From assembly GCA_002269645.1 (NCBI GenBank), contig NIVC01001151.1, positions 266,204 to 330,203 on the forward strand: a DNA stretch of 64,000 bases, written 5' to 3'. The DNA comes from Macrostomum lignano (lineage: Eukaryota). A model generated the notes under the pieces. It was not told the origin of the DNA. It worked only from the letters and a program-made list of their open reading frames with translations, and did no database searches. Every line of letters starts with the position of its first letter. Positions within the stretch are counted from its first letter, which is position 1. Below are positions 13,146 through 64,000 of the stretch, in pieces. The translations under genes and the position numbers were made by a program.

Positions 13146-13911
13146 TGCGAGCACCTTGGCACAACGCCTTCGGTGACAGCGCTGCCCATTCCCCTGTACT
13201 CAGGCACAGCACTCACACACACGCTCACACAGGGTGTCAGCGGTCATTGTGAATTTCTAATCGCCAGGCATGTGCACTCTCTGTGCTTTGGGGTTTGGCC
13301 CTCATGTGGCCCGCACGACTCGCTCCTAACAGACAATGACTAACCAAAGTATAGATACCAAAAAGTATCTCATGCAAAATGATTCCTAGCAACTACATGT
13401 AATGTACTGCCGAACTTTTCATATTTCTTATCTGCAACCAACCGATATATATTGCCCCCTTCCCCCAATAAAAAGCATTCCATGCCCCCCTCTGATCATG
13501 ATTGCCACTAAGGGGATCGGGGCACAGTCCAAGTGGCTATAAAACCAGAAAAAAAGCAACCACCAAGGTTATGGCAAAGGCGAATGTTGCATCCGGGGGA
13601 ATTGGGAATACGGCTAGCAACTAATATGAGCTATCATAACTCAAGCTGGACTACACGGCTATTTGGCTGTTTTGCACACCAAAGCGCAGCAGCAGCCGCC
13701 ACCACCACCTTCTGCCCAGGAAGTTTTACGATCAGAGCTGGGCCAGGTGTATGATAATAAGTAAGTTGCCCAATCGGAATTCCAAGGATTGTCCATTGAT
13801 TTACGATCAATGAGTTGGGTAGGAGACTTATAATATCTGCCGATACGAAGCCTGTGATTGTATTATATTAGTTTGTGTGCATAAGCTTCAGTGAGTTTAA
13901 TGATCAATCGA

Positions 13912-17733: not shown

Positions 17734-18059
17734 GATTGCTTTGATGTCGGCGTGTCTGATAATCTGATTGATTAATAGATTGATTGACTGATTGATTGAT
17801 CAGTGCCTAATTGGCGCACCGGACAAAGGGAAACGCTTGAGTGTTTGAGGGACAGCTTGGGTGGGGGAGGCCAGGACTAATAAGCAGATCCCTGGGTATA
17901 GGGGCCGGCTGACGCTGGGGAGTCTGCAGAAAACAATGCGAGTGCAGAAACGATTCCTGATTGGCTGAGAGCGATTAAGCCAATGAGACGCTGGTTAACC
18001 TGGAGATTTCTCCTTTTTTCGTACCAGACTTTGCTTGGGTAGGAGAATGGAATTATCAG

Positions 18060-19196
18060 ATGGAAGCATCCAATGACCAGATGGAAGCATCCAATGACCA
18101 GATGGAAGCATCAAATGACCAGTTGGAAGAATCAAATGACCAGATGGAAGAATCAAATGACCAGTTGGAAGAATCAAATGACCAGATGGAAAAATCAAAT
18201 GACCAGATGGAAGAATCAAATGACCAGATGGAAAAATCAAATGACCAGTTGGAAGAATCAAATGACCAGATGGAAGAATCAAATGACCAGATGGAAAAAT
18301 CAAATGACCAGTTGGAAAAATCAAATGACCAGATGGAAGAATCAAATGACCAGATGGAAAAATCAAATGACCAGTTGGAAAAATCAAATGACCAGATGGA
18401 AGAATCAAATGACCAGATGGAAGAATCAAATGACCAGTTGGAAAAATCAAATGACCAGATGGAAGAATCAAATGACCAGATGTGAGAATCAAATGACCAG
18501 ATATGAGAATCAACTGACCAGATGGAAGAATCAAATGACCAGATATGAGAATCAACTGACCAGATAGAAGAATCAAATGACCAGATGGAAGAATCAAATG
18601 ACCAGATGGAAGAATCAAATGACCAGATGGAAAAATCAAATGACCAGTTGGAAGAATCAAATGACCAGTTGGAAGAATCAACTGACCAGATGGAAACATC
18701 AAATGACCAGATGGAAGAATCAAATGACCAGTTGGAAGAATCAAATGACCAGTTGGAAAAATCAAATGACCAGATGGAAGAATCAAATGACCAGATATGA
18801 GAATCAAATGACCAGATATGAGAATCAAATGACCAGATATGAGAATCAAATGACCAGATGTGAGAATCAAATGACCAGATATGAGAATCAAATGACCAGA
18901 TGTGAGAATCAAATCACTAGATGTGAGAATCAAATGACCAGATATGAGAATCAAATGACCAGATATGAGAATCAAATGACCAGATATGAGAATCAAATGA
19001 CCAGATATGAGAATCAAATGACCAGATGTGAGAATCAAATGACCAGATATGAGAATCAAATGACCAGATGTGAGAATCAAATGACCAGATATGAGAATCA
19101 AATGACCAGATGTGAGAATCAAATCACTAGATGTGAGAATCAAATGACCAGATATGAGAATCAAATGACCAGATGGAAGAATCAAATGACCAGATG
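18060..19196. repeat. 21-bp minisatellite (AATCAAATGACCAGATGGAAG)n, left block
   Basis: Direct inspection; the same unit resumes at ~20000. Confidence 0.95.
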
Positions 19197-19344
19197 CAAT
19201 GGCATCTGTCCGGTGGTCCCTTTGTCCGCACTGGGTATCTGTACTCAGTGCTTTCCCTCTTAATGGTTTCTTTACTCATTTTCGCAGAGACGCTCGTCCG
19301 TCGCTTGCTGAGCTCTGTCTGATGTTGGTCACGATGCATACTCA

Positions 19345-22762: not shown

Positions 22763-30736
<7,974 letters not shown>

Positions 30737-44500: not shown

Positions 44501-47500
44501 AAAATCTAAAATACTACTAACTAAAAAACAACTTACAGTAACATTAAAAGCAAATACTCGTATCTTACTTTTATTTCATGAAAAACGGAAGCAATTTAAA
44601 CTTTCATGGGGAACGGTAGTTTTGGATGTATAATCCTGAAGTACTCGTACGAGTCTTTAAATGGTATGGGATCATTCTAATGCGATGGGATATTCTGATG
44701 GGATAGGATGGGATCATTCTAATGCGATGGGATATTCTGATGGGATAGGATGGGATCATTCTGATTGTATAGGATCATTCTGGTCGGATGGAATCATTCT
44801 GATGGGATGGGATCATTCTGATGGGATGGGATCATTCTGATAGGATGGGATCATTCTGATGGGATGGGATAGGATCATTCTGATGGGATAGGATCATTCT
44901 GATGTGATGGGATGGGATCATTCTGATGGGACAGGATCATTCTGATGGGATAGGATCATTCTGATAGGATAGGATCATTCTGATGGGATGGGATCATTCT
45001 GATAGGATAGGATCATTCTGATGGGATGGGATCATTCTGTTATGGGATCAGTACGATGGTGTGGGATAATTCTAGATATGATGGGATTTAAACAATCTAA
45101 TTGGCATAGGATTAATCCCAACGAAATTCGCAATCGAATCCTATGGCATGGGAGTTTCAATCTCGTGCATCAGCTGCTGCTGCTGCTGCTGCTGCCTCGC
45201 CAGCATCTGCTGCCGGTCCCGAAGCCGCTGCTCGGTGGCGCAAAAGATGCAGCCGGTGGTGGCACCGAGGCCAGAGCCTGTTGAGCCAATGAGAGCGCAC
45301 GGCTGATGACCGCCAGCGGTGAGCACTGCTCTCAGGTGGGCGATGTACCTGGCGGCCAGGCGCAAAGTCTCCACCTTGGACAATTTTCTGTCGCTCGGCT
45401 CCGTGGGGATGCAGCAGCGAAGCCGACCGAAGGCCGCGTTGACGTCGGCGGTTCGCCGCCGCTCACGAGGCTGATGATGATGAGGCTGCGTCGTCTGGTT
45501 GGGCCGGCTCGCCATCGCTTGATGCTGTGGCGGGGGAGGAGGGGGTTTGGAGATGAGGGAGCCTTTTAGGCGCTGCTGTTACATGATCCTACGGGCCGTT
45601 ACATGATCCTACGGGCCGTTACATGATCTGTTTGGTCTGTTACATGATCCTTTCGGTCTGTTACATGATCCTCTTGGTCTGTTACATGATCCTACGGGCC
45701 GTTACATGATCCTTTCGGTCTGTTACATGATCCTACGGGCCGTTACATGATCTGTTTGGTCTGTTACATGATACTTTCGGTCTGTTACATGATCCTCTTG
45801 GTCTGTTACATGATCCTTTTGGTCTGTTACATGATCCTTTTGGTCTGTTACATGATCCTTTTGGTCTGTTACATGATCCGTTTGGTCTGTTACATGATCC
45901 TCTTGGTCTGTTACATGATTCTTTTGGGCTGTTACATGATCCTTTTGGTCTGTTACATGATCCTTTTGGGCTGTTACATGATCCTTTTGGCCTGTTACAT
46001 GATCCGTTTGGGCTGTTACATGATCCTACGGGCTACAGACCAGTTACATGATCCTTTTGGCCTGTTACATGATCCGTTTGGGCTGTTACATGATCCGTTT
46101 GGGCTGTTACATGATCCTACGGGCTACAGACCAGTTACATGATCCTTTTGGCCTGTTACATGATCCGTTTGGGCTGTTACATGATCCTACGGGCTACAGA
46201 CCAGTTACATGATCCTTTTGGGCTATTACATGATTATCTTGGGTTGTTACATAATTATTTTTTAGTTTTTTACGTCATACAATTACCTGTTTCGCGACCC
46301 TACGGGCTGTTAAATGATCTTTCTAGATGGTTACATGATTCTACAGGCTCTTGCATGATCCCAAGGATTGTCGTATCTTTTGGACTATATCAAATAATAT
46401 TTTGAGCTGTACTACATGATCTTGAAAGTTAATCCATGATTCTGAATTCCAATACATGATCTTGAAGGCTAATACATTATCCGAAAGTCTAATACATGAT
46501 CTAAAAGTCCAATAGATAATCCCTGTATTTGACAAAAAATTGCTTTTACACAAAATAAAACTTACCAAAATTGCTGTCTCAACTTTTCAAGCTGTCAAAA
46601 AGATCCACAGATCAACTGTCTTGCAGATTTCCGAGTTGATCTGAAATTTGAATATTGAAAACTTTTAATAGGGCTGCCGGTCACGCTTTGTCTTCATAGA
46701 AAACTGGAATCGAAGGGAGGAAAGAGTGTGAGGGAGTTCAGGGCCAATAGTAGGCCTTCAAATATGTTTGCCAATATCTTTGGTTGGTTCTGAACGCTGA
46801 TGAATGATTGATTGCTACTGGCCTGGGGTCTGATGGCCAAGGACTATTGGAACGTCTGGATTGGAACTCGCTTCGAGTTTTGGAACAGTTTTTTGAATTG
46901 TAATAATTTCAAGGCAGTTTTTCCAAGTAGTCTGATTTATTTAGCTCTTTACCTTTAAACTCTAAGTAACTTTTGAAGGTCACTGACATAAATAGCAATC
47001 ATTTAGGATCTATTTTGCTTTAATTGGCATTCAAAGCTTTTGTTTCCCAGTCCAGAAGCAATTTCAGGGGTTCCTGGTACTGCGCGCGCCGATCCAATTA
47101 AAGCTTGTTTTTCCTTTGCTTTCTTTCCTCTTCTAAAAGCAGCAATTTGAAACTTTGGCCTGGCAAGGTTCTGCAAGAGCCGGCATCTCTTGTCTGGGGG
47201 GGGGGGGAATTCCTGACAAACTAATTGGGCCGATTGTTCAAACACTTCCCCAAGGAAAGTTTCAGCTTGGCAACTAAATTATCAAGTGAAAGCGGGGGGT
47301 TCTGTCAGTAATTATGCCACCAGTTTTACAGAATCTGCCATCCGCTGTAACCAAACTTCAGAGCCTGCTGGTTGGCGATGCCCAGGGCAATGTGCAGGTC
47401 TTCAAGCTGGAAAATATGCCTTCGGCTCCGAAAAATCAGGTAAGTGTTTTTGCCAACGATTAATGGATAGAGATAAAGGTGTGAGGGACAGAGATAAGGG

Positions 47501-49367
47501 AGTGAGGGACAGAGATAAGGGAGTGAGGGAGAGAGATAAGGGTGTGAGGGACAGAGATAAGGGAGTGAGGGAGAGAGATAAGGGAGTGAGGGACAGAGAT
47601 AAGGGAGTGAGGGAGAGAGATAAGGGTGTGAGGGAGAGAGATAAGGGAGTGAGGGACAGAGATAAGGGAGTGAGGGACAGAGATAAGGGAGTGAGGGACA
47701 GAGATAAGGGAGTGAGGGAGGGAGATAAGGGAGTGAGGGACAGAGATAAGGGAGTGAGGGACAGAGATAAGGGAGTGAGGGACAGAGATAAGGGAGTGAG
47801 GGAGGGAGATAAGGGAGTGAGGGACAGAGATAAGGGAGTGAGGGACAGAGATAAGGGAGTGAGGGAGAGAGATAAGGGTGTGAGGGAGAGAGATAAGGGA
47901 GTGAGGGACAGAGATAAGGGAGTGAGGGACAGAGATAAGGGAGTGAGGGACAGAGATAAGGGAGTGAGGGAGGGAGATAAGGGAGTGAGGGACAGAGATA
48001 AGGGAGTGAGGGAGGCAGATAAGGGTGTGAGGGACAGAGATAAGGGTGTGAGGGACAGAGATAAGGGAGTGAGGGAGAGAGATAAGAGAGTGAGGGAGAG
48101 AGATAAGGGAGTGAGGGAGAGAGATAAGGGAGTGAGGGACAGAGATAAGGGAGTGAGGGAGAGAGAGATAAGGGAGTGAGGGAGAGAGATAAGGGAGTGA
48201 GGGAGAGAGATAAGGGTGTGAGGGACAGAGATAAGGGTGTGAGGGACAGAGATAAGGGAGTGAGGGAGGGAGATAAGGGAGTGAGGGACAGAGATAAGGG
48301 TGTGAGGGACAGAGATAAGGGTGTGAGGGACAGAGATAAGGGAGTGAGGGAGAGAGATAAGAGAGTGAGGGACAGAGTTAAGGGAGTGAGGGACAGAGAT
48401 AAGGGATTGAAGGAGAGAGATAAGGGAGTAAGGGAGAGAGATAAGGGTGTGAGGGACAGAGATAAGGGAGTAAGGGAGAGAGATAAGGGAGTGAGGGACA
48501 GAGATAAAGGAGAGAGGAAGAGAGATAAGGGATTGAAGGAGAGAGATAAGGGAGTGAGGAAGAGAGGTAAGTGAGCGAGGGAGTGATATCAGAGAAGATA
48601 GGAAAAGCTTATAGCTAGTATAATATCAATAAATAAAGTCAGAAAAAAGTTCAACGCAGACAGTTGCAGCATTGCAAAACTTCTAGAAAATACCACGCAG
48701 GGTTCAGTTCGTATAGGCGTGAAAATTATCACTGCAACAGCTGCTAGAATCATGGCTTGGTGGGTGCGGGTTTGTTTACCTCTGCCAAACTTCCGAAGTC
48801 CTTCTTGATCGAAGCTACATCGCTGACGCAACCGGATTTTCTCAGTAGATTCCTTCATCGCGACCTGTTGCGCAACCGCTATTATTATTAACACCGCGCC
48901 TTGAACGTGACTTGTTGGGGACGCCTGTAGCGTCTGAGGTTGCTATGGTTACACCCTTATGGACATGAACCAGATTCTCCATCTAAAGGGTTATAAAAAG
49001 GAAGCGAATTCTTGCCAAATGATGTTAAAAATTTATCTTAAAGTATAAAAAAAATGTTTGTGTCATGAAGTATGATTATTACTCAGACATATGAGAGTGA
49101 CAGTTCATGAAAATGACAGTTCAGGAGAGTGACAGTTCACGAGAGTGACAGTTCACGAGAGTGACAGTTCATGAGAGTGACAGTTCACGAGAGTGACAGT
49201 TCACGAGAGTGACAGTTCACGAGAGTGACAGTTCACGAGAGTGACAGTTCACGAGAGTGATAGTTCATGAGAGTGAAATTTTATTAAATTCCCTGCAGGC
49301 CGAAGCTCTGGACCGAGTCATACAGCTGGCCTTGAAGACCGAACTGAATGCCAGCCAGACAGCCTGA
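36444..49367 (+). CDS. DNAI4: Dynein axonemal intermediate chain 4 (WDR78), 15 exons, ~833 aa
   Basis: Exons 36444-36475, 37222-37477, 37806-38180, 38721-39009, 39565-39666, 40530-40636, 40718-40820, 41022-41185, 41564-41805, 42420-42710, 43139-43355, 43923-44020, 44372-44450, 47362-47439 and 49299-49367. GT-AG, phases consistent, total 2502 nt. Motifs [53 protein letters not shown]. Exons 1 and 5 are less certain. Confidence 0.92.
37577..37698. promoter_or_regulatory. Cluster of RFX X-box-like motifs in DNAI4 intron 2
   Basis: GCTTCCTTGGCAAC at 37656-37669 and 37685-37698 fits RYYNYYWWRRNRAC; a weaker GTGTCCTTGGCAAC lies at 37577-37590. Confidence 0.35.
38385..38595. repeat. (GTTA)n microsatellite
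   Basis: Direct inspection. Confidence 0.95.
39165..39440. repeat. Degenerate GT-rich ~15-bp minisatellite (GGTTTTATGGGGGTT)
   Basis: Direct inspection. Confidence 0.8.
40125..40400. repeat. ~64-bp minisatellite (CAGCCCCAGCTGGTTTTATTGCAAATTTTATTGGCCTACTGCCCCTCG...)
   Basis: About 4 units. Confidence 0.8.
41275..41505. repeat. Degenerate ~45-50-bp minisatellite (GAGATCCCACCGATTCCCAATGAGGATTTTTCTCCCATCC...)
   Basis: Direct inspection. Confidence 0.75.
41810..42410. repeat. 27-bp minisatellite (ATTAACACCCACCTCACTCCGCCAAGC)n interrupted by a MITE
   Basis: Direct inspection. Confidence 0.92.
42148..42335. mobile_element. hAT MITE, 188 bp
   Basis: TIRs CAGGCGCGGATCC / GGATCCGCCACTG; 8-bp TSD ACACCCAC at 42140-42147 and 42336-42343. 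Confidence 0.9.
42720..43090. repeat. 15-bp minisatellite (GGATTCGGGACTAAA)n
   Basis: Direct inspection. Confidence 0.93.
43440..43720. repeat. GGGATCT-based compound repeat
   Basis: Direct inspection. Confidence 0.8.
44660..45045. repeat. 19-bp minisatellite (GATGGGATGGGATCATTCT)n
   Basis: Direct inspection. Confidence 0.9.
45141..45515 (-). CDS. Paraxis/scleraxis (TCF15/SCX)-type bHLH transcription factor, 124 aa, antisense within DNAI4 intron 13
   Basis: [45 protein letters not shown] plus the family C-terminal QPC...CIFC motif. The true N-terminus is uncertain. Confidence 0.88.
45577..46260. repeat. 21-bp minisatellite (CTGTTACATGATCCTTTTGGT)n
   Basis: Direct inspection. Confidence 0.93.
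47468..48575. repeat. 21-bp purine minisatellite (GAGATAAGGGAGTGAGGGACA)n
   Basis: About 52 units in the last DNAI4 intron. Confidence 0.95.
48939..48952. promoter_or_regulatory. RFX X-box consensus match in a CpG-rich patch
   Basis: GTTGCTATGGTTAC; the reverse strand GTAACC-AT-AGCAAC fits GTNRCC(N0-3)RGYAAC exactly. Confidence 0.4.
49095..49272. repeat. 16-bp minisatellite (GAGAGTGACAGTTCAC)n
   Basis: Direct inspection. Confidence 0.92.
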
Positions 49368-50421: not shown

Positions 50422-50930
50422 ATGAACTTCGCTGCCTTAACAGCGATACTGCTAGTTGAGGCCTTCTGCAGCCGCAACGGCTTTCAAGGCAAATTGCTTG
50501 ATCGATTTTGCATTAGTTATCCATGGCACTCCCATTTTTTTTTCTACCGCATCCAATACTGGCCATGCCTTACGTATGGAGTCTGCACACTGATTAGCCT
50601 GCGTAGCGTGACTCCCGCTGCTCAACTCTGTCTCGACGCCTCCACCGAAAGTCTCGTCGCTTTCGCGACCCTCGGTGCCGCTCCGTGCGTCCGACCGGCG
50701 ATGTTCGAAGCGGTGAACCTCCTGCCAGCTCGGCCGGACACTCTGGCTCTCCTGTTGTCCGACGATGGCACTCGGCTCTGTTCCTGACGGCCGGCAACGG
50801 CTCGAGACTCGACGCGACTCCGCTCACATCGGCGGCACAGCTGACTGCGGCCAGCTTTCGGACTCGACTGTCCGGAGCAGACGGCGGTGTCAGCTTTGAG
50901 AGCGTCCTGCGGCCGGGGATGTTTGTGGGA
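50422..50930 (+). pseudogene. Truncated, frameshifted copy of the AbfB/F-type lectin gene (copy 1)
   Basis: Signal-peptide-like MNFAALTAILLVEAFC, then an AbfB-like segment highly similar to 56029-56345. A +2 frameshift lies near 50765, and the copy breaks off into the 30-bp minisatellite. Confidence 0.75.
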
Positions 50931-50934
50931 CATT

Positions 50935-51670
50935 GTGGGACACAGTTGTAGAGTGGTCTTATAGATTTGACACAGTGTTTATAGTGGCCTTATAGATCCG
51001 AAACAGTTTTAGAGTGGTCTTATAGATTCGACACAATGGTAGAGAGGCCTTATAGATCAGACACAATGCCAGAGGAACCTTACAGATTAGACAGTGTTAG
51101 AGTGGTCTTATAGATCAGACACAGTGTTTATAGTGGGTTTATAGATCCGAAACAGTGTTAGAGTGGTCTTATAGATCAGACACAATGGTAAAGAGGCCTT
51201 ATAGATCAGACACAATGGTAGAGTGGTCTTATAGATCAGACACAGTGTTTATAGTGGCCTTATAGATCCGAAACAGTGTTAGAGTGGTCTTATAGATCAG
51301 ACACAATGGTAAAGTAGCCTTATAGATCAGACACAATGGTAGAGAGGCCTTATAGATCAGACACAATGGTAGAGTGGTCTTATAGATCAGACACAGTGTT
51401 TATAGTGGCCTTATAGATCCGAAACAGTGTTAGAGTGGTCTTATAGATCAGACACAATGATTGAGAGGCCTTATAGATCAGACACAATGGTAGAGAGGCC
51501 TTATAGATCAGACACAATGCTAGAATGGCCTTATAGATCAGACACAATGGTAGAGAGGCCTTATAGATCAGACACAATGGTAGAGAGGCCTTATAGATCA
51601 GACACAATGGTAGAGTGGTCTTATAGATCAGACACAGTGTTTATAGTGGCCTTATAGATCAGACACAGTG
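50935..51670. repeat. 30-bp minisatellite (GACACAATGGTAGAGAGGCCTTATAGATCA)n, left block
   Basis: Direct inspection. Confidence 0.93.
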
Positions 51671-51674
51671 TTCA

Positions 51675-53630
<1,956 letters not shown>

Positions 53631-54090
53631 AAGAGGCCTTATAGATCAGACAAAATGGTAGAGTGGTCTTATAGATCAGACACAGTGTTTATAGTGGCCT
53701 TATAGATCCGAAACAGTGTTAGAGTGGTCTTATAGATCAGACACAATGGTAGAGAGGCCTTATAGATCAGACACAATGGTAGAGTGGTCTTATAGATCAG
53801 ACACAATGGTAGAGAGGCCTTATAGATCAGACACAATGGTAGAGAGGCCTTATAGATCAGACACAATGGTAGAGTGGTCTTATAGATCAGACACAGTGTT
53901 TATAATGGCCTTATAGATCCGAAACAGTGTTAGAGTGGTCGAACAATGCTAGAATGGCCTTATAGATCAGACACAATGGTAGAGAGGCCTTATAGATAAG
54001 ACACAATGATGGAGAGGCCTTATAGATCAGACACAATGGTAAAGTGGTCTTATAGATCAGACACAATGGTAGAGAGGCCTTATAGATCAG
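53631..54090. repeat. 30-bp minisatellite, right block
   Basis: Same unit as 50935-51670. Confidence 0.93.
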
Positions 54091-54333
54091 ATACAGCTAG
54101 CCGTTAAGATCTGAATCATTTAGGTGAACATTAACGGGGCAAGTGAAGGCTCATTCACATGTGGCTGGGCAAATTGCTTCAAGCCAATCAGGCTCCAGGT
54201 AGAGACCTGTATATGCTGATGATCTGTGACTTCGCAGACAACTTGTCTGCTCATTTCTTTCTCCATCTTCTTGGGTTCCAAACTGCTGCTCAAGATTGTC
54301 ACTGCATTGCTTTGCAACACCGAGGACAAAACG

Positions 54334-57300
54334 ATGAGGCCTCTCGCCCTCTTGATGGCTCTTTCGGCTGCAATTCAGCTTCCAGACTTTTGTTCAGGTG
54401 AGACTGTTGCCTGTCTTTTTGGGTTTATTGCAATCAACGGAACTGCGTATCGAAGTTACAAGTAGTCACCCAGACCTAATCAGCACCTTACCACTCTGTA
54501 GCATAGACCAACTCCCTCAGGCATAGGTAATCACTCAGACCTAATCAGCACCTTACCACTCTGTAGCATAAGACCCACTCCCTCAGGCATAGGTAATCAC
54601 TCAGACCTAATCAGCACCTTACCACTCTGTAGCATAAGACCCACTCCCTCAGGCATAGGTAATCACTCAGACCGAATCAGCACCTTACCACTCTGTAGCA
54701 TAGACCCACTCCCTCAGGCATAGGTAATCACTCAGACCTAATCAGCACCTTACCACTCTGTAGCATAGACCCACTCCCTCAGGCATAAGTAATCACTCAG
54801 ACCTAATCAGCACCTTACCACTCTGTAGCATAGACCCACTCCCTCAGGCATAGGTAATCACTCAGACCTAATCAGCACCTTACCACTCTGTAGCATAGAC
54901 CCACTCCCTCAGGCATAGGTAATCACTCAGACCTAATCAGCACCTTACCACTCTGTAGCATAGACCCACTCCCTCAGGCATAGGTAATCACTCAGACCTA
55001 ATCAGCACCTTACCACTCTGTAGCATAGACCCACTCCCTCAGGCATAAGTAATCACTCAGACCTAATCAGCACCTTGCCACTCTGTAGCATAGACCCACT
55101 CCCTCAGGCATAGGAAATCACTCAGACCTAATCAGCACCTTGCCACTCTGTAGCATAGACCTCAGATATAGATATAGATCTAGATCTATAGATCACATAT
55201 AGATCTAGACACAGTCAAGACTACCTAAGCTATCAAGCAGCTTTACCACTCTGACACGAACCCCAGTCTAACACTAATTGGTAGTCACACAGCCTCTTCT
55301 TTACTAAAGAAGAAACAAGGGCTATAATGGCCTTGAATTCGTTATATTATTCTCCACTGCTCATTACTCAACAACCTTACGTCAGAAGGCAACCAGTCTG
55401 CCAACAATGAACTGCATGCGCTTGGAATTTAGAGTAGTTTCCCAGAAGGGAAGATATTTCTATTGAATTGATCAGCCATCTCTGTGTACCGTGCAATCCA
55501 TCAGAAAAATTGCTAGTCATGCTGGCTGCATCAAATGAATAGGGGGGGGGGGGGCTGCTCTGCTCGAAACGACAATCGGCCTCTAGTTTTTAATTCAAAG
55601 AAAATCGCTGCGATTGTTGTTGCTGCTTTGCTACGTGCCTGTGACCCTGCCGAGCCCCCCCGCGGAGGAACCGGGCCCCCATCTTCCTTGCTCGGTTCCA
55701 GGCGAATTTTTTTGTATGCCAGTGCCTAAAAAAGTTCGCCAGATTTTTGTATTTTGGTTGCATTTGTAGAAATTGAGCTAGCTAACTGCAGTGCATACGA
55801 CAGCCCTGACTTTCCTATCACCATAAATCATAAATTCACTCTGTGCAGATGGGGGTGCATCGCACGCCAAGCGAAAGGCCCATTCACACACTTTTACAAG
55901 CACCAGTCTATCGTAAAATTTTCACAAATAGATTAGCATAATAATTTACTCTGACTGAAAGCCCATCAACTTGGAATGCAGGTCTACCGCTGTGTCCCAA
56001 TGAGCAGCTCAGTCTCGCTGCTCAGCTGACTCCAGCTGCTCAACTCTGTCTCGACGCCTCCACCGAAAGCCTCGTCGCTTCCGCGACCCTCGGTGCCGCT
56101 CCGTGCGTCCGATCGGCGATGTTCGAAGCGGTGAACCTCCTGCCAGCTCGGCCGGACACTCTGGCTCTCCTGTTGTCCGACGGCGCTCCGACTCTGTTCC
56201 TGACGGCCGGCAACGGCTCGAGACTCGACGCGACTCCGCTCACATCGGCGGCACAGCTGACTGCGGCCAGCTTTCGGACTCGACTGTCCGGAGCAGACGG
56301 CGGTGTCAGCTTTGAGAGCGTCCTGCGGCCGGGGATTTTCGTCGGACTTTTGTCGCCGAACTCCACTGAGGCAGGCGGGTCGGCTGTGGGACTGACAGCG
56401 GCCGAGCTGAGCTTCACCGTGAACTGCAGCACTGGTGAGTCGGCTGAGGACCTCCTCTGTGGAGCTGTGAGCTGTCATTGTTGTTTAACTTTCTGAAAGC
56501 TCTGCTTTTTCAGCCGCTTCGTCCCTGCGGTCTCGCGGCCAGCCGGCCCGCTTCTCCACCATCAACTACGCCGGGCTGTACGCGTCCTCCCTGGTGGACG
56601 GAAACCACAATGGAAGATGGAGCTCCGGCTCGTGCGCTGAGACCTTCGCTTCCGACCCGACGCCCTGGTTCATGATCGACCTGCTGCGCGACTTCCTCAT
56701 CGACCGAGTGGACGTGTACAACCGTCAGGACTGCTGCTACACTCGGTTCCGACAGGTGACTCTCGGTGTGGGATCGGATCCGCAGTCGTGGGTCACCTGG
56801 TCGCCGAGCCAGTTCGCACAGGTGAATTACTACGCTGGTCCGGCGAGTCTGAGTCCTCAGGTAGTACCGTTTTCGGACATCCTGCTCGTTGGACGGTTCA
56901 TCGTGCTGCAGAAGAACGTCACGGGTCTGGCTTCCAATCAGCTGATCATGAACCTGTGCGAGGTCGAGGTCTTCGGCTGGGACGTCTGTGAGTGCTTTGC
57001 GTATGGATTTTTTCGCATAGATTAGAGCTTGCTTAGCAATCGCCACTTGTCGCCACTTGCAGTTCCACTCGTGTCGGAGGGCATGCCGACCGCCGCCAGT
57101 TCTGCAGTCAGCACTGAGTTGTCAGTCGATGCCAAACTCAGCAACTGCTTCAACTCGCCGATCGCAACATCCAATGACTCCACCGCGTGGCTTCTCGTGG
57201 ACTTTCTGCGTCCGGTGCAGTTGCACGAAGCCTCAGTCATTCTGGCTGTTCAGGCAGCGTCCAATGCTGAAACCAGTTTGCAGTTTTACGGAGTGCAAGA

Positions 57301-57473
57301 CGCATCGTCCAACGGCACTGCTCTGGCAAACGTGTCATTTAGAGGCAACAAAGTTGGCCAAGTTCAACAGCGAGTGCATCTCAAGGACCGGACTGGTCAG
57401 ATGGTTCGGATGACCATTGACGGGACGTCGCAGCTGTCCATCTGCGAGATTCAGGTGTTCGCAGCTTCAGTTG
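54334..57473 (+). CDS. Secreted modular lectin-like protein (copy 2): signal peptide, AbfB/CBM42-like domain, F-type lectin, degenerate F-type domain; 3' end disrupted
   Basis: Exons 54334-54397, 55982-56434, 56514-56987 and 57063-57473, all joined by phase-1 introns with an open frame. AbfB motif ASFRTRLSGADGGVSFESVLRPG; F-type motifs VDGN...GSC, PWFMIDL, NRQDCC, GRF, LCEVEVF. Confidence 0.82.
54465..55160. repeat. 65-bp minisatellite in intron 1 of lectin copy 2
   Basis: About 10.5 near-identical units with no spacers. Confidence 0.95.
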
Positions 57474-57495
57474 GTGAGGATTAGTTTTTAGTGAC
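55425..57495 (+). repeat. Left arm of a >=2.07-kb inverted duplication (partner 61935-64000)
   Basis: The reverse complement of the window end matches 55425 onward; identity ends at TTAGTGAC (57495 / 61935). Confidence 0.95.
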
Positions 57496-58850
57496 TCTCT
57501 ATCTTCACTATGATCTTCCCGACTCAGTTCGGTAACCAGAGCCAATTCGCTTGATGTAACGCCATCGAGGGATTGTACTGGTAAATGCTTCCAGTTGGTC
57601 ATCTTTCTCCAGTGTCTAATAAACTAACAATGTGTTTGTATTCTCAAAGGCTTCAGACTGCGCTTCTGTCCTCTTTCTGCCCAACAAAAGGCTCGCTTTC
57701 TGTTGCAGCTACTTATGTCTATGGTTCAAGCCAGACCCTAGACGTCGAATTAGAAATCATATAGACAACTAACCATTGCAGCTACTTATGTCTATGGTTC
57801 AAGCCAGACCCTAGACGTCTAATTTTAGACATGCATTGTCCAGAAGACACAGCCTGGCGTAATGACAAACTCAACTGGCCATTATTTCAGCTTTAACAGA
57901 CGTTTGAACCATAGACGATTAGTTAAAGTATTCATATATTAACTGGCATAAGGGAATAATGTTCACAGTAATGATAATCATAACAATAGTAATATTTGTG
58001 AGAAGAAAAATGATAGTCAAAACTATTTAGCCACAAAACTATTTAGCAGAAAACGCGCCTAACACAAAAACAACATAGTAGTCGTAGTCTGTTCATCAGA
58101 AGTTGCTCATTAAAAATGAAATGTGCAATCCTTGAAGTGGCAATTCTCGAAAAACCGAACTGGCAACGACTGGATTTCCACGGCGTCAAGGTTGACTCCA
58201 TCTTCGGCGGGAGGCAGCTCCGGCAAGTCTTCGAGCCACTTGATAAATGAACTCAATTCTACATCCTGTTGATGCTCCTTTGCACTTAGCTCGGATAGTA
58301 GTTCTAACTCATATCTAGATACTCCGTTAAGGCTGTCCACGGGAAGATGCGACCAATTGATAAGCGCCACAGCCGAAAAAAGAAAAGACAGCTCTGTTAA
58401 TCCCCGATCTCGACTATCTCTACTTCTCGTCAGCTCAAGCCTATCATCAGCTTATTCATTTATAGTCTATGGCCCAACAGCTTTTTTATTTATAGTCTAT
58501 GGCCCAACCACCGCCCTCCTTACGCAGTCGCACGCACGCAGACTCTTACCCTGAAATAATGACCGCTTCCGGCACGCTGAAATAATGGCCAGGCTGTGTC
58601 TTATAGACAATGACGTTGCGTAGTAGGTAAGGGGCTGAAATAATGGCCTTAGACACTCGTGCGCGGGCAATCTACCATTGCCACATATGTAGCTCGTAGC
58701 AATGCATGATTGTCACACGCTTCGCGAGTGGCTTGATCAATAGGACAATAATATTGTCTATATGATTTCTTCCATAGACAATGCTCGAAGCCACTCGAGG
58801 CAATTCGTACATTGCCTATATCAGAAATCATTTAGACAACTAACCATTGC
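57496..58850 (-). other. Unclassified insertion with two diverged copies of a small unknown ORF and short direct repeats
   Basis: ORF 58110-58370 (INWSHLPVDSLNGVSRYELELLSELS...FFENCHFKDCTFHF*) and a truncated homolog at 57496-57610 (TNWKHLPVQSLDGVTSSELALVTELS); ~44-bp direct repeat at 57704 and 57776. Confidence 0.45.
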
Positions 58851-59344
58851 TAGGGTTTTCTATGCTCGTATAGATAACAGATTTTGCAAAGATTTGCTGT
58901 TTTACACAGTGCTAATGGGGTTATGCCATAGAAAAATGCACTAAAGTGATGGGAACATGGATGAAGGATTCCTTCCTTCATCCATGGATGGGAACAGCTG
59001 AAATTTCTTCGATGTTCGACTTCGTTGACTTTTAACGCTTTGAACAAAGCCCTAATATTAACAAGACAAATAAAGAGGAAATAGCCAGAGCTGAGGCTAC
59101 GGAGCAGACCCACGTTGGCTGCCAATTCATTTGTTTCTTTGTTGGAAAAAGACACAACAGTTTTGTATTCATTACTTTATTGCTGCCTAGTGCCTGATCA
59201 CAATGCATGGAAAAGGCCAGCTCATTGGAGTGCAACAAGTTTTCATTTGGTGCCTGCGTGATTTGTAAGGAAGGCTGCTTGCGTGCGGGAGATAATACTA
59301 TTCATATATGAAAGTGTTTTGACGGTCATCAGCAACCTTAGTTA

Positions 59345-59880
59345 ACAAAATTCACAAACAGCACACCTGTCGCCTGTGGATTCCCGGGCCAGTATTCCTG
59401 TGGATTCCCGAGACGTCCTGCTGAGCGACTTCCTCGTTGACCGAGTTTACGTGTGGATCCGATTATCAGGGGTGGCTGGAAAAGTTGCTGAGCCAGTTCA
59501 CGCTGGTGAACTGCTCTGCTGGTCCGGCGGCTGCTGCTGGAAGTCCGAAAACTTTTACACACATCAGGCGTGTTGGACGTTTCGTCATGCTGCAGAAGAA
59601 TGCCACTGGTCTCGCTTCTGAGCAGCTCGTCATGAGCCTGAACGAACTTGAAGTGTTCGGTTGAGACGTCTGTAAGTTCGAGTTTATTGTTACCTTGAGC
59701 CTGGAGATGATGCTTCCTGTGCAGCTGCACGAAGTGTTTCTCACCGCGACCGTTCTGGACGTCATCAAAACGGAGATCACCTTCGATTTACCCATCATTG
59801 GAGACGAATGGACTGACGAAATCAAAATCACGAAATTCTACAGAACCGGAGATCATGACCGAGTGCGCGCGGGTACCTGA
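59345..59880 (+). pseudogene. Decayed paralogous F-type lectin exon plus a fragment of the degenerate F-type exon
   Basis: LLSDFLVDRV...VGRFVMLQKNATGLASEQLVMSLNELEVFG*DV (TGG>TGA; same GAC GTC T|GT donor as copy 2), then PVQLHE. Internal deletions are present. Confidence 0.8.
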
Positions 59881-59997
59881 ATGACTGGACGGGCGGGTCG
59901 TTGCAGCTGACCATTTCCGGCATGTTTTTACACCAAAAAGAGCAGCAACTTTATCAAGAAACGTTTGCTTCAACTTGATCATCTGCTTCACTCCCAG

Positions 59998-60237
59998 CTC
60001 CGATTCTGTGCGGCGGCGGCGGCGAGGCCTTCGAGCTCTGGGAGGCCAAGCCGAACACATCCAGCGGCACCCGCCGACTTCTGCACTGCACCGATCCGCT
60101 GCCGCAGCCGGCAGCTCAGTCCGGTTGCCATGGCTACGCCGAACGCGTTAGCAACCGACTGGCTGCCCCTGAGGCTGCTGCAGCGGCCGGCTCTGAGCCC
60201 GGCTGGCGCGGCCGCCTTCGGCAGGCGGTCGGCGGAG
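59998..60237 (+). pseudogene. Truncated, frameshifted paralog of the second AbfB-like exon
   Basis: Acceptor CTCCCAG|CT then PILCGGGGEAFELWEAKPNTSSG; homologous to minus-strand 61638-61400; ends at the 14-bp minisatellite. Confidence 0.8.
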
Positions 60238-60244
60238 TGTACAG

Positions 60245-60405
60245 CGGCAGTCAATTTGTATCAGTCACTTTCTGATAATCAGTTTGTGATATTCAGTTTG
60301 TGACAGTCAATTTGTGACAGTCAATTTGTGACAGTCAATTTGTGACAGTCAATTTGTGGCAGTCAATTTGTGACAGTCAATTTGTGACAGTCAGTTTGTG
60401 ACAGT
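60245..60405. repeat. 14-bp minisatellite (TGACAGTCAATTTG)n
   Basis: Direct inspection. Confidence 0.88.
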
Positions 60406-61104
60406 GACCCGTCAGACAAAGAACAGGGCCAGTCAACCCAGACAGATTGAAATTTCTATTCAGGGTAACGGGCTTCAATAACTCAGACTGGATAAACACA
60501 CAGAGAGCGCAAAGGCAGTCTCTGGACACTGAACTCTATTGCTCAAATTTAAGATGACTGTATTCTTTAAATTTGTAATAATTTTTGTAATAGCAGAAGG
60601 TAAAAACATCATCTTATAAAGGCTTGAAATGTCAATTTTCTCTGTCTCGCCAATGCGTACTTATATTTCATGTACATGTATTCTGAGTGGCAATTGAAGG
60701 CTTTAACACGTCACTCCATTTCTTATTGACAGTCGCGTAATGGAAGCAATTAAAGTCTGAAATGTCAACGAGATCAATAAAAAGTTGACATTACTTTGTT
60801 TGAACTGTCATGCTGTCAGACTTGCCATTTTAAATTTCTTTTTTTCAATGCTAAAGGCTTGGCCTTAGAAAGATAGCTGCTTTAGCTTAAATTCTTAAGC
60901 GTCGTATATAAACAGTCGTCGATATTTTGAGTCAGTATATTTATAAAGAAAAATTTAACAGAAACATATTCACACAAAAGCGCATCAATGTACTTCAATA
61001 TTTAATAAAAAATATATATTTTTAATAAGCATACCTACCTTTGCCTTACCTTTGTGAGACAGCGGGTTGAAATAATGATAAAGTCACCCAGAGGGAATGC
61101 TCAC

Positions 61105-63447
61105 CGGAGTCGCAGGCGGCCTCGAAGCTGCTCACCAGCCCGACACCGTCAGCCTCCGCCAGTCGCAGCGTCGCCACGCCGACTGCCGACTCCGCTGCCA
61201 GAAGGCCTGCCGCGCCATGCCGCAGCTCGAGTCTCCCGCAGCAGGACGTCGCGTGCGGCTGCGCCAGGCTGAAGGTCGCTCGCTGACGCTCCGCCTCGGC
61301 GTCGGCACCGCCGCCGCTCGTCGGGCGAAACAGCGCCGCGGTGTCGTTGGCTCCGGTCGGCAGGATGCTCAGGAACCAGCCGGGAGCTGCCGCAGCTTCG
61401 AAGGACGCCGCCGACCGCCGGCGGAAGGCGGCCGCGCCAGCCGGGCTCAGAGCCGGTCGCTGCAGCAGCCTCAGGGGCAGCCAGTCGGTTGCTAACGCGT
61501 TCGGCGTAGCCATGGCAACCGGGACTGAGCTGCCGGTCGCGGCTGTGGACCAGTGCAGAAGTCGGCGGGTACCGCTGGATGTGTTCGGCTTGGCCTCCCA
61601 GAGCTCGAAGGCCTCGCCGCCGCCGCACAGAGTGGGAGCTGGGAGTGGAACGGGATTTTGAATTGCGGTTACCAGCTGTGCTAGAATAAAGGTTTCACAT
61701 TGAGAGAAGTCAAGTTAGCTGATATTCATACTCATAATTGTATTTTAAAGGCGTCAAGTAGCTGTCTGCGGTAAATCCGGCTGACTCTTGCGCTACGCGA
61801 CCCCCAGACTTATTTATTGCGCGCCCGCCTTCATTTGGGGCTTGTGTGCACGGATATTGGCCAGGTGGGGTGCGATTCACAGCCAAGAGGGCCAACAGCC
61901 GTTCTGTAGTTGTTATTATTATCGGACTTTAAGCGTCACTAAAAACTAATCCTCACCAACTGAAGCTGCGAACACCTGAATCTCGCAGATGGACAGCTGC
62001 GACGTCCCGTCAATGGTCATCCGAACCATCTGACCAGTCCGGTCCTTGAGATGCACTCGCTGTTGAACTTGGCCAACTTTGTTGCCTCTAAATGACACGT
62101 TTGCCAGAGCAGTGCCGTTGGACGATGCGTCTTGCACTCCGTAAAACTGCAAACTGGTTTCAGCATTGGACGCTGCCTGAACAGCCAGAATGACTGAGGC
62201 TTCGTGCAACTGCACCGGACGCAGAAAGTCCACGAGAAGCCACGCGGTGGAGTCATTGGATGTTGCGATCGGCGAGTTGAAGCAGTTGCTGAGTTTGGCA
62301 TCGACTGACAACTCAGTGCTGACTGCAGAACTGGCGGCGGTCGGCATGCCCTCCGACACGAGTGGAACTGCAAGTGGCGACAAGTGGCGATTGCTAAGCA
62401 AGCTCTAATCTATGCGAAAAAATCCATACGCAAAGCACTCACAGACGTCCCAGCCGAAGACCTCGACTCGCACAGGTTCATGATCAGCTGATTGGAAGCC
62501 AGACCCGTGACGTTCTTCTGCAGCACGATGAACCGTCCAACGAGCAGGATGTCCGAAAACGGTACTACCTGAGGACTCAGACTCGCCGGACCAGCGTAGT
62601 AATTCACCTGTGCGAACTGGCTCGGCGACCAGGTGACCCACGACTGCGGATCCGATCCCACACCGAGAGTCACCTGTCGGAACCGAGTGTAGCAGCAGTC
62701 CTGACGGTTGTACACGTCCACTCGGTCGATGAGGAAGTCGCGCAGCAGGTCGATCATGAACCAGGGCGTCGGGTCGGAAGCGAAGGTCTCAGCGCACGAG
62801 CCGGAGCTCCATCTTCCATTGTGGTTTCCGTCCACCAGGGAGGACGCGTACAGCCCGGCGTAGTTGATGGTGGAGAAGCGGGCCGGCTGGCCGCGAGACC
62901 GCAGGGACGAAGCGGCTGAAAAAGCAGAGCTTTCAGAAAGTTAAACAACAATGACAGCTCACAGCTCCACAGAGGAGGTCCTCAGCCGACTCACCAGTGC
63001 TGCAGTTCACGGTGAAGCTCAGCTCGGCCGCTGTCAGTCCCACAGCCGACCCGCCTGCTCAGTGGAGTTCGGCGACAAAAGTCCGACGAAAATCCCGGCC
63101 GCAGGACGCTCTCAAAGCTGACACCGCCGTCTGCTCCGGACAGTCGAGTCCGAAAGCTGGCCGCAGTCAGCTGTGCCGCCGATGTGAGCGGAGTCGCGTC
63201 GAGTCTCGAGCCGTTGCCGGCCGTCAGGAACAGAGTCGGAGCGCCGTCGGACAACAGGAGAGCCAGATGTCCGGCCGAGCTGGCAGGAGGTTCACCGCTT
63301 CGAACATCGCCGATCGGACGCCACGGAGCGGCACCGAGGGTCGCGGAAAGCCGACGAGGCTTTCGGTGGAGGCGTCGAGACAGAGTTGAGCAGCTGGAGT
63401 CAGCTGAGCAGCGAGACTGAGCTGCTCATTGGGACACAGCGGTAGAC
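61105..63447 (-). CDS. Lectin-like gene copy 3 (inverted): AbfB-like, F-type lectin, degenerate F-type, second AbfB-like domain; signal exon presumably beyond the window end
   Basis: Exons 63447-62995, 62915-62443, 62367-61957 and 61638-61105 with phase-1 introns. The fourth is open (AASFEAAAAPGWFL, ERQRATFSL). The first two carry single-base indels relative to copy 2 (error or decay). Confidence 0.75.
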
Positions 63448-64000
63448 CTGCATTCCAAGTTGATGGGCTTTGCAGTCAGAGTAAATTATTATGCTAATCT
63501 ATTTGTGAAAATTTTACGATAGACTGGTGCTTGTAAAAGTGTGTGAATGGGCCTTTCGCTTGGCGTGCGATGCACCCCCATCTGCACAGAGTGAATTTAT
63601 GATTATGGTGATAGGAAAGTCAGGGCTGTCGTATGCACTGCAGTTAGCTAGCTCAATTTCTACAAATGCAACCAAAATACAAAAATCTGGCGAACTTTTT
63701 TAGGCACTGGCATACAAAAAAATTCGCCTGGAACCGAGCAAGGAAGATGGGGGCCCGGTTCCTCCGCGGGGGGCTCGGCAGGGTCACAGGCACGTAGCAA
63801 AGCAGCAACAACAATCGCAGCGATTTTCTTTGAATTAAAAACTAGAGGCCGATTGTCGTTTCGAGCAGAGCAGCCCCCCCCCCTATTCATTTGATGCAGC
63901 CAGCATGACTAGCAATTTTTCTGATGGATTGCACGGTACACAGAGATGGCTGATCAATTCAATAGAAATATCTTCCCTTCTGGGAAACTACTCTAAATTC
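61935..64000 (-). repeat. Right arm of the inverted duplication (runs off the window)
   Basis: Near-identical reverse complement of 55425-57495. Confidence 0.95.

What the first reader, a model, noticed from the sequence alone, without database searches (positions are those of the whole stretch)
54334..63447. Secreted lectin-like gene family combining AbfB/CBM42-like and F-type lectin domains
Seen: a signal-peptide exon followed by one domain per exon, all introns phase 1: AbfB-like (SFESVLRPG), F-type lectin, degenerate F-type, and in copy 3 a second AbfB-like domain (SFEAAAAPGWFL). At least four intact or broken copies lie within 50.4-63.4 kb. Established: AbfB/CBM42 is the arabinose-binding beta-trefoil of fungal/bacterial arabinofuranosidases and in animals is best known from otogelins; F-type domains bind fucose; phase-1 symmetric exons typify exon-shuffled extracellular modules. 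Inference: a lineage-specific, exon-shuffled, dual-specificity glycan-recognition family (mucus, adhesion, microbe or diet sensing) undergoing local birth and death. I do not recognise this architecture from any named protein.
Basis: partly seen in the sequence, partly recalled or inferred. Interest (0 to 1): 0.8.

Follow-up and report, generated by a model that had tools for sequence, protein, structure and literature searches.

The report
Flatworm F-type lectin gene cluster
This stretch of the flatworm Macrostomum lignano genome holds a young, partly decayed cluster of genes for a secreted sugar-binding (F-type lectin) protein. The two flanking modules match no known family, so calling them arabinose-binding (AbfB) domains is not supported.

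Summary
The gene structure is real. Copy B has a signal-peptide exon followed by one module per exon, with GT-AG introns all in phase 1. There are four copies:
- A: a fragment.
- B: four intact exons, + strand.
- C: degraded.
- D: an inverted twin of B that carries a fifth exon.

Neighbouring genes match Macrostomum lignano proteins at 98-99% identity.

Exon 3 is a true F-type lectin domain (PDB FBP32, E 2e-20). It keeps the calcium motif, the cysteines and both arginines. The fucose-binding histidine is replaced by glutamate.

Exon 4 is a degenerate F-type domain that has lost every binding residue.

The two "AbfB-like" modules, D1 and D5, fail every AbfB/CBM42 test:
- no Pfam hit;
- CBM42 profiles match only about 18 residues;
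- no internal threefold repeat (z 1.0 and 0.1, against 23 for a real CBM42).

D1 has no relative among 1.84 billion proteins. D5's motif SFEAAAAPGWFL fits the interleukin-1 family signature slightly better, but only as a motif. AlphaFold2 without an alignment failed (pLDDT 31-35), so the fold is unknown.

Arms B and D differ by eleven 1-base indels and one substitution at the edge, which points to long-read consensus error. Copy D's "breaks" are therefore probably not real.

Verdict: a lineage-restricted mosaic F-type lectin with two orphan modules. Interest is moderate to low.

The parts
54334..54397 (+). Copy B exon 1: start codon and signal peptide (MRPLALLMALSAAIQLPDFCS), with a phase-1 donor
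   Evidence: Sequence read directly; exon phases computed
55982..56434 (+). Copy B exon 2: orphan module D1 (151 aa, 4 Cys, contains SFESVLRPGIF).
   Evidence: AG/GT boundaries, 453 nt, phase 1-1. No Pfam hit, no PDB hit, no true homologue in 1.84e9 proteins
56514..56987 (+). Copy B exon 3: F-type lectin domain. It keeps LVDGN (Ca motif), RQDCCYTR (RxDx4R) and the conserved Cys. CAET replaces the usual C-x-H-T
   Evidence: Pfam PF22633 1.8e-12 and PF00754 6.5e-10; PDB 3cqo 2.2e-20 and 1k12 6e-10; alignment
57063..57484 (+). Copy B exon 4: degenerate F-type domain. A phase-1 GT donor follows 57473; read-through gives ...ASVGED then TAG at 57482-57484. AATAAA lies at 57618-57623
   Evidence: Pfam F5_F8_type_C 0.012, below cut-off. 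F-type HMM 13-14 bits over residues 11-134, with 0 of 1000 shuffles reaching it. Sequence
62995..63447 (-). Copy D exon D1: identical to copy B except for six 1-base indels
   Evidence: Inverted-repeat alignment
62443..62915 (-). Copy D F-type lectin exon: identical to B except for one missing G, which shifts the frame near its end
61957..62367 (-). Copy D degenerate F-type exon: 100% identical to B
61105..61638 (-). Copy D exon 5: orphan module D5 (178 aa, 4 Cys, contains SFEAAAAPGWFL). It lies 318 nt downstream of the dFTP donor. It has a phase-1 acceptor and a phase-1 GT; read-through would add GEHSLWVTLSLFQPAVSQR and a stop, with ATTAAA just beyond
   Evidence: Sequence; phases. No Pfam hit. 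Best PDB hits are IL-36Ra, E 0.046. hhalign against IL-1 gives 64.6% over 23 columns
50608..50934 (+). Copy A: pseudogene fragment of D1. About 97% identical to B, with a +2 frameshift near 50765, cut off by a satellite at 50934. An in-frame signal-peptide-like start lies at 50422
59418..60270 (+). Copy C: degraded pseudogene. It holds the 3' half of the F-type exon (55% aa identity), a remnant of the degenerate F-type exon, and the first 92 codons of D5 (77-93% identity). A 14-bp satellite cuts it off
55425..57498 (.). Left arm of the inverted repeat; the right arm is 61932-64000 and runs off the window. There are 0 substitutions (1 at the edge) and eleven 1-base indels
50939..54095 (.). A 30-bp satellite array (50939-51667 and 53632-54095) interrupted by a non-LTR reverse transcriptase / RNase H fragment (51647-53531). 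It separates copy A from copy B

Best explanation
The locus belongs to the free-living flatworm Macrostomum lignano. It carries a young, lineage-restricted cluster of genes for a secreted mosaic F-type lectin.

The ancestral gene has five exons, one module each, joined by phase-1 introns:
1. a signal peptide;
2. D1, an orphan cysteine-bounded module of 151 aa;
3. a canonical F-type lectin domain;
4. a second F-type domain that has lost the binding triad, the vicinal cysteines and the calcium motif;
5. D5, an orphan module of 178 aa.

Copy D (minus strand) has this full order. Copy B is an inverted duplicate whose breakpoint lies about 25 nt into the last intron, so it lacks D5 and ends ...ASVGED. 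Copies A and C are pseudogene fragments broken by frameshifts, deletions, satellites and a retrotransposon.

Shown: the exon structure, the domain identity of exons 3 and 4, the copy structure and the species.

Inferred:
- The protein is secreted and N-glycosylated.
- The first F-type domain binds a terminal sugar in the usual shallow pocket using the two retained arginines. The His-to-Glu change probably alters or weakens fucose specificity.
- The dead second domain acts as a structural partner, as in tandem two-domain F-type lectins.
- D1 and D5 add an unknown binding or assembly function.
- The frameshifts in copy D are consensus errors of a long-read assembly, not mutations.
For: Species: the neighbouring GPCR and TMEM184 exon match M. 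lignano UniProt proteins at 99% and 98% identity.

Gene model: canonical GT-AG sites, all phase 1, exons that are multiples of 3. GC3 is the highest codon position in every exon, as in the neighbouring GPCR.

F-type domain: Pfam 1.8e-12; PDB FBP32 2.2e-20, eel agglutinin 6e-10 and pneumococcal fucolectin-related protein 4e-07. Alignment shows LVDGN, RQDCCYTR and the conserved Cys, with Glu where His stands in the relatives. The motif definition is from PMC5712786.

Degenerate domain: full-length match to an F-type HMM built without window sequences, 13.1 bits, 0 of 1000 shuffles.

Copies.

Indel-only difference between arms. M. lignano assemblies are PacBio/Canu, polished with short reads, with 180-312 Mb duplicated (PMC5730564).

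Paralogue substitutions: 10 synonymous to 11 non-synonymous, a mild excess of synonymous changes.
Against: - No transcript evidence could be consulted.
- No M. lignano protein model containing any of these modules was found in the protein collections, although neighbouring genes are there. The gene may be silent, rarely expressed or simply unannotated.
- As assembled, copy D is frameshifted.
- Copy B lacks the fifth module.
- The His-to-Glu change means sugar binding is not assured.
- D1 and D5 are Ala/Leu/Ser-rich and lie in GC-rich DNA, where long open frames arise more easily. Their fold and function are unknown; AlphaFold2 gave pLDDT 35 and 31.
Confidence: 0.7

Rival explanations
1. Exons 2 and 5 are AbfB/CBM42-type arabinose-binding beta-trefoils, so the protein is a dual-specificity lectin (arabinose plus fucose).
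For: - D1 'AASFRTRLSGADGGVSFESVLRPGIF' resembles the CBM42 unit junction 'DATFRVVPGLADSSGVSFESVNYPGRY'. Real CBM42 chains were recovered with such a consensus.
- D5 has SFEAAAAPGWFL followed by RATFSL.
- The whole-domain CBM42 HMM scores D1 above all but 4 of 1000 shuffles.
Against: - Pfam AbfB does not appear even at E<=10.
- The CBM42 HMM scores are only 1.2 and -1.0 bits.
- The single-unit HMM is not significant: 41 and 21 of 1000 shuffles reach it.
- hhalign probabilities are 4.5% and 0.7%, over 18 columns only.
- The invariant CBM42 residues (NYP, Y-[IL]-R-H, D-A-T-F) are absent.
- There is no internal repeat: z 1.0 and 0.1, against 23 for CBM42 3kmv.
Confidence: 0.07
2. D5, and perhaps D1, is a beta-trefoil module related to the interleukin-1 family rather than to AbfB.
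For: - Five of the eight weak PDB matches of D5 are IL-36Ra / IL-1F5 chains. They align SAASFEAAAAPGWFLSILP with TSSFESAAYPGWFLCTVP (E 0.046-0.63).
- The IL-1 HMM gives D5 9.8 bits, and 0 of 1000 shuffles reach it.
- hhalign gives probability 64.6%, P 6e-05.
- The IL-1 profile is valid: it retrieves only IL-1 family chains.
- In D1 the motif sits at residue 110 of 151, as in IL-1 (about 113 of 153).
Against: - The match covers only 17-23 residues.
- Pfam IL1 does not hit.
- D1 against IL-1 has probability 1.6%.
- In D5 the motif is central, with about 100 residues after it against about 30 in IL-1, so D5 is not collinear with one IL-1 domain.
- The family was picked after seeing the PDB result.
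- D1 and D5 are not demonstrably homologous to each other.
Confidence: 0.08
3. The whole cluster is dead. All copies are unexpressed pseudogenes, and the D1 and D5 'exons' are GC-rich open frames without protein function.
For: - No matching protein model in M. lignano proteomes.
- Two of the four copies are clearly broken.
- D1 and D5 have no homologues and a biased composition.
- The synonymous:non-synonymous ratio is only mildly shifted.
Against: - Copy B keeps four open exons, all splice sites and all phases.
- The F-type domain keeps its structural cysteines and its calcium motif.
- GC3 is the highest codon position in the proposed frames.
- The arginine-poor composition and alternating hydrophobic pattern of D1 are unlike the off-frame translations.
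Confidence: 0.15
4. Copy D's arm of the inverted repeat is an assembly artefact, so there is only one intact gene.
For: - No substitutions in the interior of about 2.07 kb, but eleven 1-base indels.
- The genome is known to be hard to assemble and highly duplicated.
Against: - The arms are separated by 4.4 kb of asymmetric unique sequence.
- The minus-strand arm joins coherently to the minus-strand D5 exon through a 318-nt intron. That is not what a fold-back read artefact produces.
Confidence: 0.25

Closest known systems
Tandem (binary) F-type lectins of fish, e.g. Morone saxatilis FBP32 (PDB 3CQO), and the single-domain eel agglutinin AAA (1K12)
   Same: - Secreted, with F-type jelly-roll domains in tandem.
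- The Ca motif hhDGx, RxDx4R, the vicinal Cys-Cys and the C-terminal CEVEVFG are all present in exon 3.
- A second domain with divergent binding residues is also known in binary F-type lectins (PMC5712786).
   Different: - His of the H/R/R triad is Glu.
- The second domain has lost all binding, calcium and disulfide residues.
- Two unrelated orphan modules flank the pair.
- The best identity to any database protein is only 31% (Haliotis fucolectin-like).
Mosaic F-type lectins (Xenopus pentraxin-FTLD, Drosophila furrowed/CG9095, sea urchin SpCRL, oyster isoforms that lack the basic triad)
   Same: The F-type domain is combined with other extracellular modules by exon shuffling. Members with substituted triad residues are known (PMC5712786).
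   Different: Known partners are C-type lectin, pentraxin, CCP, FA58C and transmembrane segments. The partners here match no described domain.
AbfB / CBM42 arabinose-binding beta-trefoil (PDB 1WD3, 3KMV, 3AKF)
   Same: A short motif, [VA]SFE[SA]xxxPGxF, preceded by A[ST]FR.
   Different: There is no profile-level similarity and no threefold repeat. The conserved NYP/YLRH/DATF residues are absent.
Interleukin-1 family signature region (IL-36Ra 1MD6, IL-1Ra 1ILR)
   Same: D5's SFEAAAAPGWFLS against SFESAAYPGWFLC.
   Different: The similarity is motif-only. D5's length and the motif's position do not fit a single IL-1 domain, and there is no Pfam IL1 hit.

Membership tests
F-type lectin domain (exon 3) | Significant sequence match to F-type / discoidin-type models and to solved F-type lectins | tested here: met
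   PF22633 scores 48.1 bits (cut-off 27.8) and PF00754 39.7 bits (cut-off 28.2). PDB 3cqo 2.2e-20 and 1k12 6e-10
F-type lectin domain (exon 3) | Fucose-binding motif H-X24-R-X-D-X4-(R/K) (PMC5712786) | tested here: not met
   RQDCCYTR is present, but the His position is Glu: CAET against CTHT, CSHT and CFHG in relatives
F-type lectin domain (exon 3) | Calcium motif hhDGx and the conserved cysteines (SC..., DCC, ...CEVEVF) | tested here: met
   LVDGN, RQDCC and NLCEVEVFG, seen in the alignment
F-type lectin domain (exon 3) | Binds L-fucose or fucosylated glycans | not testable with these tools
   Needs recombinant protein and a glycan array
F-type lectin domain (exon 4, degenerate) | Sequence match over the whole domain | tested here: inconclusive
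   Pfam E 0.011-0.012, below cut-off, and no PDB hit. An independent F-type HMM does align residues 12-134 at 13.1 bits, and 0 of 1000 shuffles reach that
F-type lectin domain (exon 4, degenerate) | Binding triad, vicinal Cys-Cys, calcium motif | tested here: not met
   Asn replaces His, LAVQAASNA replaces NRQDCCxxR, and VSTE replaces DGN
AbfB / CBM42 (exons 2 and 5) | Match to Pfam AbfB or to profiles of solved CBM42 domains | tested here: not met
   No Pfam hit at E<=10. HMM scores 1.2 and -1.0 bits. hhalign probabilities 4.5% and 0.7% over 18 columns
AbfB / CBM42 (exons 2 and 5) | Three clearly repeated sequence units, each with S-x-N-Y-P-x-x-Y-[IL]-R-H and D-A-T-F | tested here: not met
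   Self-alignment z is 1.0 (D1) and 0.1 (D5), against 23.4 for 3kmv. The unit HMM is not significant
AbfB / CBM42 (exons 2 and 5) | Beta-trefoil fold | tested here: inconclusive
   AlphaFold2 without an alignment gave pLDDT 35.1 (D1) and 30.7 (D5). The models are unusable and no fold search was run
Interleukin-1 family (exon 5) | Full-length match to IL-1 profiles (about 150-aa trefoil) | tested here: not met
   Only 17-23 residues align. No Pfam IL1 hit

The most novel reading that the evidence does not exclude
D5, and possibly D1, are highly diverged beta-trefoil modules that carry an interleukin-1-family-type signature. They sit in a flatworm secreted lectin, fused to F-type lectin domains. 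That would be an invertebrate relative of a fold family whose cytokine members are, to my knowledge, known only from vertebrates.
Probability: 0.07. Interest if true: 0.7.

Novelty: new variant of a known kind. Interest (0 to 1): 0.3.

Why it matters
If the gene is expressed, it adds a flatworm-specific architecture to the F-type lectin family, which is already very mosaic. It also adds a natural His-to-Glu variant of the fucose triad that could show how specificity shifts. And it defines two extracellular modules with no detectable relatives, which are candidates for new domain families.

In M. lignano, a model for adhesion, regeneration and reproduction, a secreted lectin of this kind could act in mucus, adhesion or microbe recognition. 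None of this is shown here.

The locus also illustrates how residual long-read indel errors in exact duplicates can mimic pseudogenes.

Tried and rejected
1. Homologue search with the 645-aa spliced composite gave nothing. Candidate retrieval was swamped by alanine-rich words.
2. An exhaustive phmmer of D1 against 1.84e9 proteins found only a fibronectin-III repeat protein. Its score is the sum of 13 weak repeats, so it was rejected as spurious.
3. A metagenome scan with D1 found nothing.
4. Exact-sequence look-ups of eight window ORFs and of the GPCR gene found nothing on record. The spliced protein was not accepted for look-up or for structure prediction.
5. AlphaFold2 on D1 and D5 without alignments gave pLDDT 35 and 31. 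No fold search was run because the models are meaningless.
6. A PDB profile search with a D1+D5 alignment gave no hit.
7. Homology between D1 and D5 is not shown. BLASTP was not significant, and Smith-Waterman gave p about 0.02-0.03 against shuffles, with two competing registers. They do share a Pro-x-Leu-Cys start and an S-F-x-x-x-C-[SD]-[ST] end.
8. A literature search found no Macrostomum F-type lectin and no F-type plus trefoil architecture.

Full report
**Where the window comes from.** It is animal DNA, very rich in mini- and microsatellites. I concatenated three neighbouring coding pieces into one query: the TMEM184 exon at 23.5-24.2 kb, the intronless GPCR at 16405-17733, and a bHLH ORF at 45141-45515. 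This retrieved UniProt proteins of Macrostomum lignano at 99% and 98% identity, and every other species fell to 74% or less. The window is therefore M. lignano, a free-living flatworm. Its public assemblies are PacBio/Canu assemblies polished with short reads. They are more than half repetitive and carry 180-312 Mb of near-identical duplications (PMC5730564).

**The observation.**
- The ATG is at 54334 and the signal-peptide exon ends at 54397.
- Three exons follow, of 453, 474 and 411 nt: 55982-56434, 56514-56987 and 57063-57473.
- All have AG/GT boundaries and all are in phase 1.
- Introns 2 and 3 are 79 and 75 nt. Intron 1 is 1.58 kb and is filled by a 65-bp satellite.
- After exon 4 there is a phase-1 GT. 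Read-through adds Gly-Glu-Asp and a stop at 57482-57484, with AATAAA about 135 nt beyond.
- A fifth module exon of 534 nt, phase 1 at both ends, lies on the minus strand at 61105-61638.

tblastn of each module against the window gives four copies:
- A: part of exon 2, at 50608-50934.
- B: as described above.
- C: the 3' half of exon 3, a scrap of exon 4 and the first 92 codons of exon 5, at 59418-60270, + strand.
- D: exons 2-5 on the minus strand, at 63447-61105.

Copy D's signal exon would lie beyond base 64000.

**Evidence that the frames are coding.**
- GC3 is the highest codon position in all four module exons, as in the neighbouring GPCR.
- Substitutions between paralogues are 4 synonymous to 5 non-synonymous in D1, and 6 to 6 in D5.
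- That is a mild excess of synonymous change over the roughly 1:3 expected without selection. The numbers are small.

**Copy history.**
- B and D are arms of an inverted repeat, 55425-57498 against 64000-61932.
- The arms differ by one substitution at the very edge and by eleven 1-base indels, most of them next to a copy of the same base.
- Real divergence gives mostly substitutions. Indel-only difference is the signature of long-read consensus error in a duplicate that short reads cannot polish.
- Copy D's frameshifts (six in exon 2, one in exon 3) are therefore probably not biological. Copy B carries the reading that makes sense: CEVEVFGW in B against CESRSSAG in D.
- The repeat ends about 25 nt into the intron after exon 4. 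The minus-strand arm continues coherently into the minus-strand exon 5 after 318 nt, and 4.4 kb of asymmetric sequence separates the arms. I therefore favour a real, very recent inverted duplication over an artefact, though an artefact is not excluded.
- Copy A is about 97% identical to B. It has a +2 frameshift and is cut off by a 30-bp satellite into which a non-LTR reverse transcriptase / RNase H element has inserted.
- Copy C has lost exon parts and is cut off by a 14-bp satellite.

**Exon 3.** It is a genuine F-type lectin domain.
- Pfam scores are above the curated cut-offs (PF22633 1.8e-12, PF00754 6.5e-10).
- The best solved relatives are striped-bass FBP32 (2.2e-20), eel agglutinin (6e-10) and the pneumococcal fucolectin-related protein.
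- Against the published motifs (H-X24-R-X-D-X4-R/K and hhDGx; PMC5712786), it keeps LVDGN, RQDCCYTR, the vicinal Cys pair and the two distal cysteines.
- It has Glu where every aligned relative has His.
- The closest database proteins are only 31-32% identical: fucolectin-like proteins of Haliotis and Latimeria.

**Exon 4.** Pfam gives only sub-threshold discoidin hits (E 0.011-0.012) and the PDB gives nothing. An F-type HMM built from Haliotis, Latimeria and FBP32 alone aligns it from residue 12 to 134 at 13.1 bits, and no shuffle out of 1000 reaches that. The landmarks AWLLVDF and LSICEIQVF are kept. The His, both Arg, the Cys-Cys pair and the calcium motif are all gone. 'Degenerate F-type' is correct.

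**Exons 2 and 5 (D1, D5).** These are the crux of the finding. Searches found no relatives:
- Pfam finds nothing, even at E<=10.
- D1 has no PDB match.
- D1's only hit among 1.84 billion representative proteins is a fibronectin-III repeat protein, scored by summing 13 weak repeats. I reject it as spurious.

To test AbfB directly, I recovered real CBM42 sequences from the PDB (3akf, 3kmv, 9nxi, 9fnk) and built profiles from them.
- The whole-domain HMM gives 1.2 bits (D1) and -1.0 bits (D5).
- The single-unit HMM is not significant.
- hhalign gives probabilities of 4.5% and 0.7%, each over 18 columns around SFE...PG.
- Real CBM42 has a striking threefold sequence repeat (self-alignment z 23). 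D1 and D5 have none (z 1.0 and 0.1).
- The invariant NYP / Y-[IL]-R-H / D-A-T-F residues are missing.

Membership in AbfB/CBM42 is therefore tested and not met.

D5's weak PDB matches include IL-36Ra / IL-1F5 chains: five of eight, with the best at E 0.046. They align SFEAAAAPGWFLSILP with SFESAAYPGWFLCTVP.
- I built an IL-1 profile from five human sequences written from memory. Its PDB hits validate it: they are exclusively IL-1 family, down to 1e-62.
- That profile gives D5 9.8 bits, with 0 of 1000 shuffles reaching it, and an hhalign probability of 64.6%.
- The match covers only 17-23 residues. The motif is central in D5, with about 100 residues after it, so D5 is not collinear with one IL-1 domain.
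- D1 does not share the signal (1.6%).

Both AbfB and IL-1 are beta-trefoils (PMC12225799), so a trefoil is a reasonable guess, but it is no more than a guess. AlphaFold2 without alignments gave pLDDT 35 and 31. I ran no fold search on such models.

D1 and D5 are not demonstrably homologous to each other. Both do have four cysteines, start with P-x-L-C and end with S-F-x-x-x-C-[SD]-[ST] just before the phase-1 donor.

**How it most likely works.**

Shown:
- a secreted-type N-terminus;
- modular phase-1 exons;
- one structurally intact and one dead F-type domain;
- a recent duplication with decay of the older copies.

Inferred:
- The product is a secreted glycoprotein. I count nine N-x-S/T sequons in the translations.
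- Its first F-type domain binds a terminal sugar through the retained Arg pair, with specificity altered by the His-to-Glu change.
- The dead domain is a scaffold, as in binary F-type lectins.
- D1 and D5 provide unknown binding or assembly functions.

Against a working gene:
- No M. lignano protein model with these modules was found, although neighbouring genes are present in the collections.
- I could not consult transcripts.

**Novelty and score.** F-type lectins are known for mosaic, lineage-specific architectures and for members with substituted triads. The partners listed in the literature are C-type lectin, pentraxin, CCP, FA58C and transmembrane segments. This gene is a new variant of a known kind, with two orphan modules. 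The headline claim of the finding, an AbfB plus F-type dual lectin, is not supported. Interest is moderate to low (0.3). The most novel reading still open is a diverged IL-1-type trefoil in a flatworm; I give it about 7%.

Noticed in passing
window 55425-57498 and 61932-64000: The inverted-repeat arms differ by eleven 1-base indels and only one substitution, at the very edge. This is probably residual long-read consensus error in an exact duplicate, and it makes copy D look like a pseudogene.
   Followed up: yes
window 57495-57623 and 58257-58385 (minus strand): Two open-frame pieces share a 43-aa motif, NWxHLPVxSLxGVxxxELxLxxELSxExH (47% identity, tblastn E about 1e-9). Pfam gives no hit. This is an unknown repeated module or element lying between lectin copies B and C.
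   Followed up: partly
window 50939-54095: A 30-bp satellite array is interrupted by a fragment of a non-LTR retrotransposon (RVT_1 1.2e-09, plus RNase H and zf-RVT traces). It abuts the truncated copy A.
   Followed up: partly
window 16405-17733 and 23504-24241 (minus strand): An intronless rhodopsin-type GPCR ORF and a TMEM184 exon. The UniProt M. lignano model P0004 (750 aa, 99% identical) fuses the two. That is either an annotation chimera or a polycistronic, trans-spliced unit.
   Followed up: no
window 45141-45515 (minus strand): A 124-aa ORF with a bHLH domain (Pfam HLH 3.6e-17). It resembles the scleraxis/paraxis group by eye.
   Followed up: no
window 50422-50787 (+): Copy A has an in-frame signal-peptide-like start (MNFAALTAILLVEAFCS) that is contiguous with its D1 fragment, with no intron. 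Copy B, by contrast, has a 1.58-kb first intron.
   Followed up: partly
window 8000-9200, 10700-11600, 12000-13300, 18000-19300, 25500-26500, 29100-30200, 47200-48600: Long arrays of short tandem repeats are open in several frames on both strands. They give large spurious ORFs and strong GC/AT skews.
   Followed up: no
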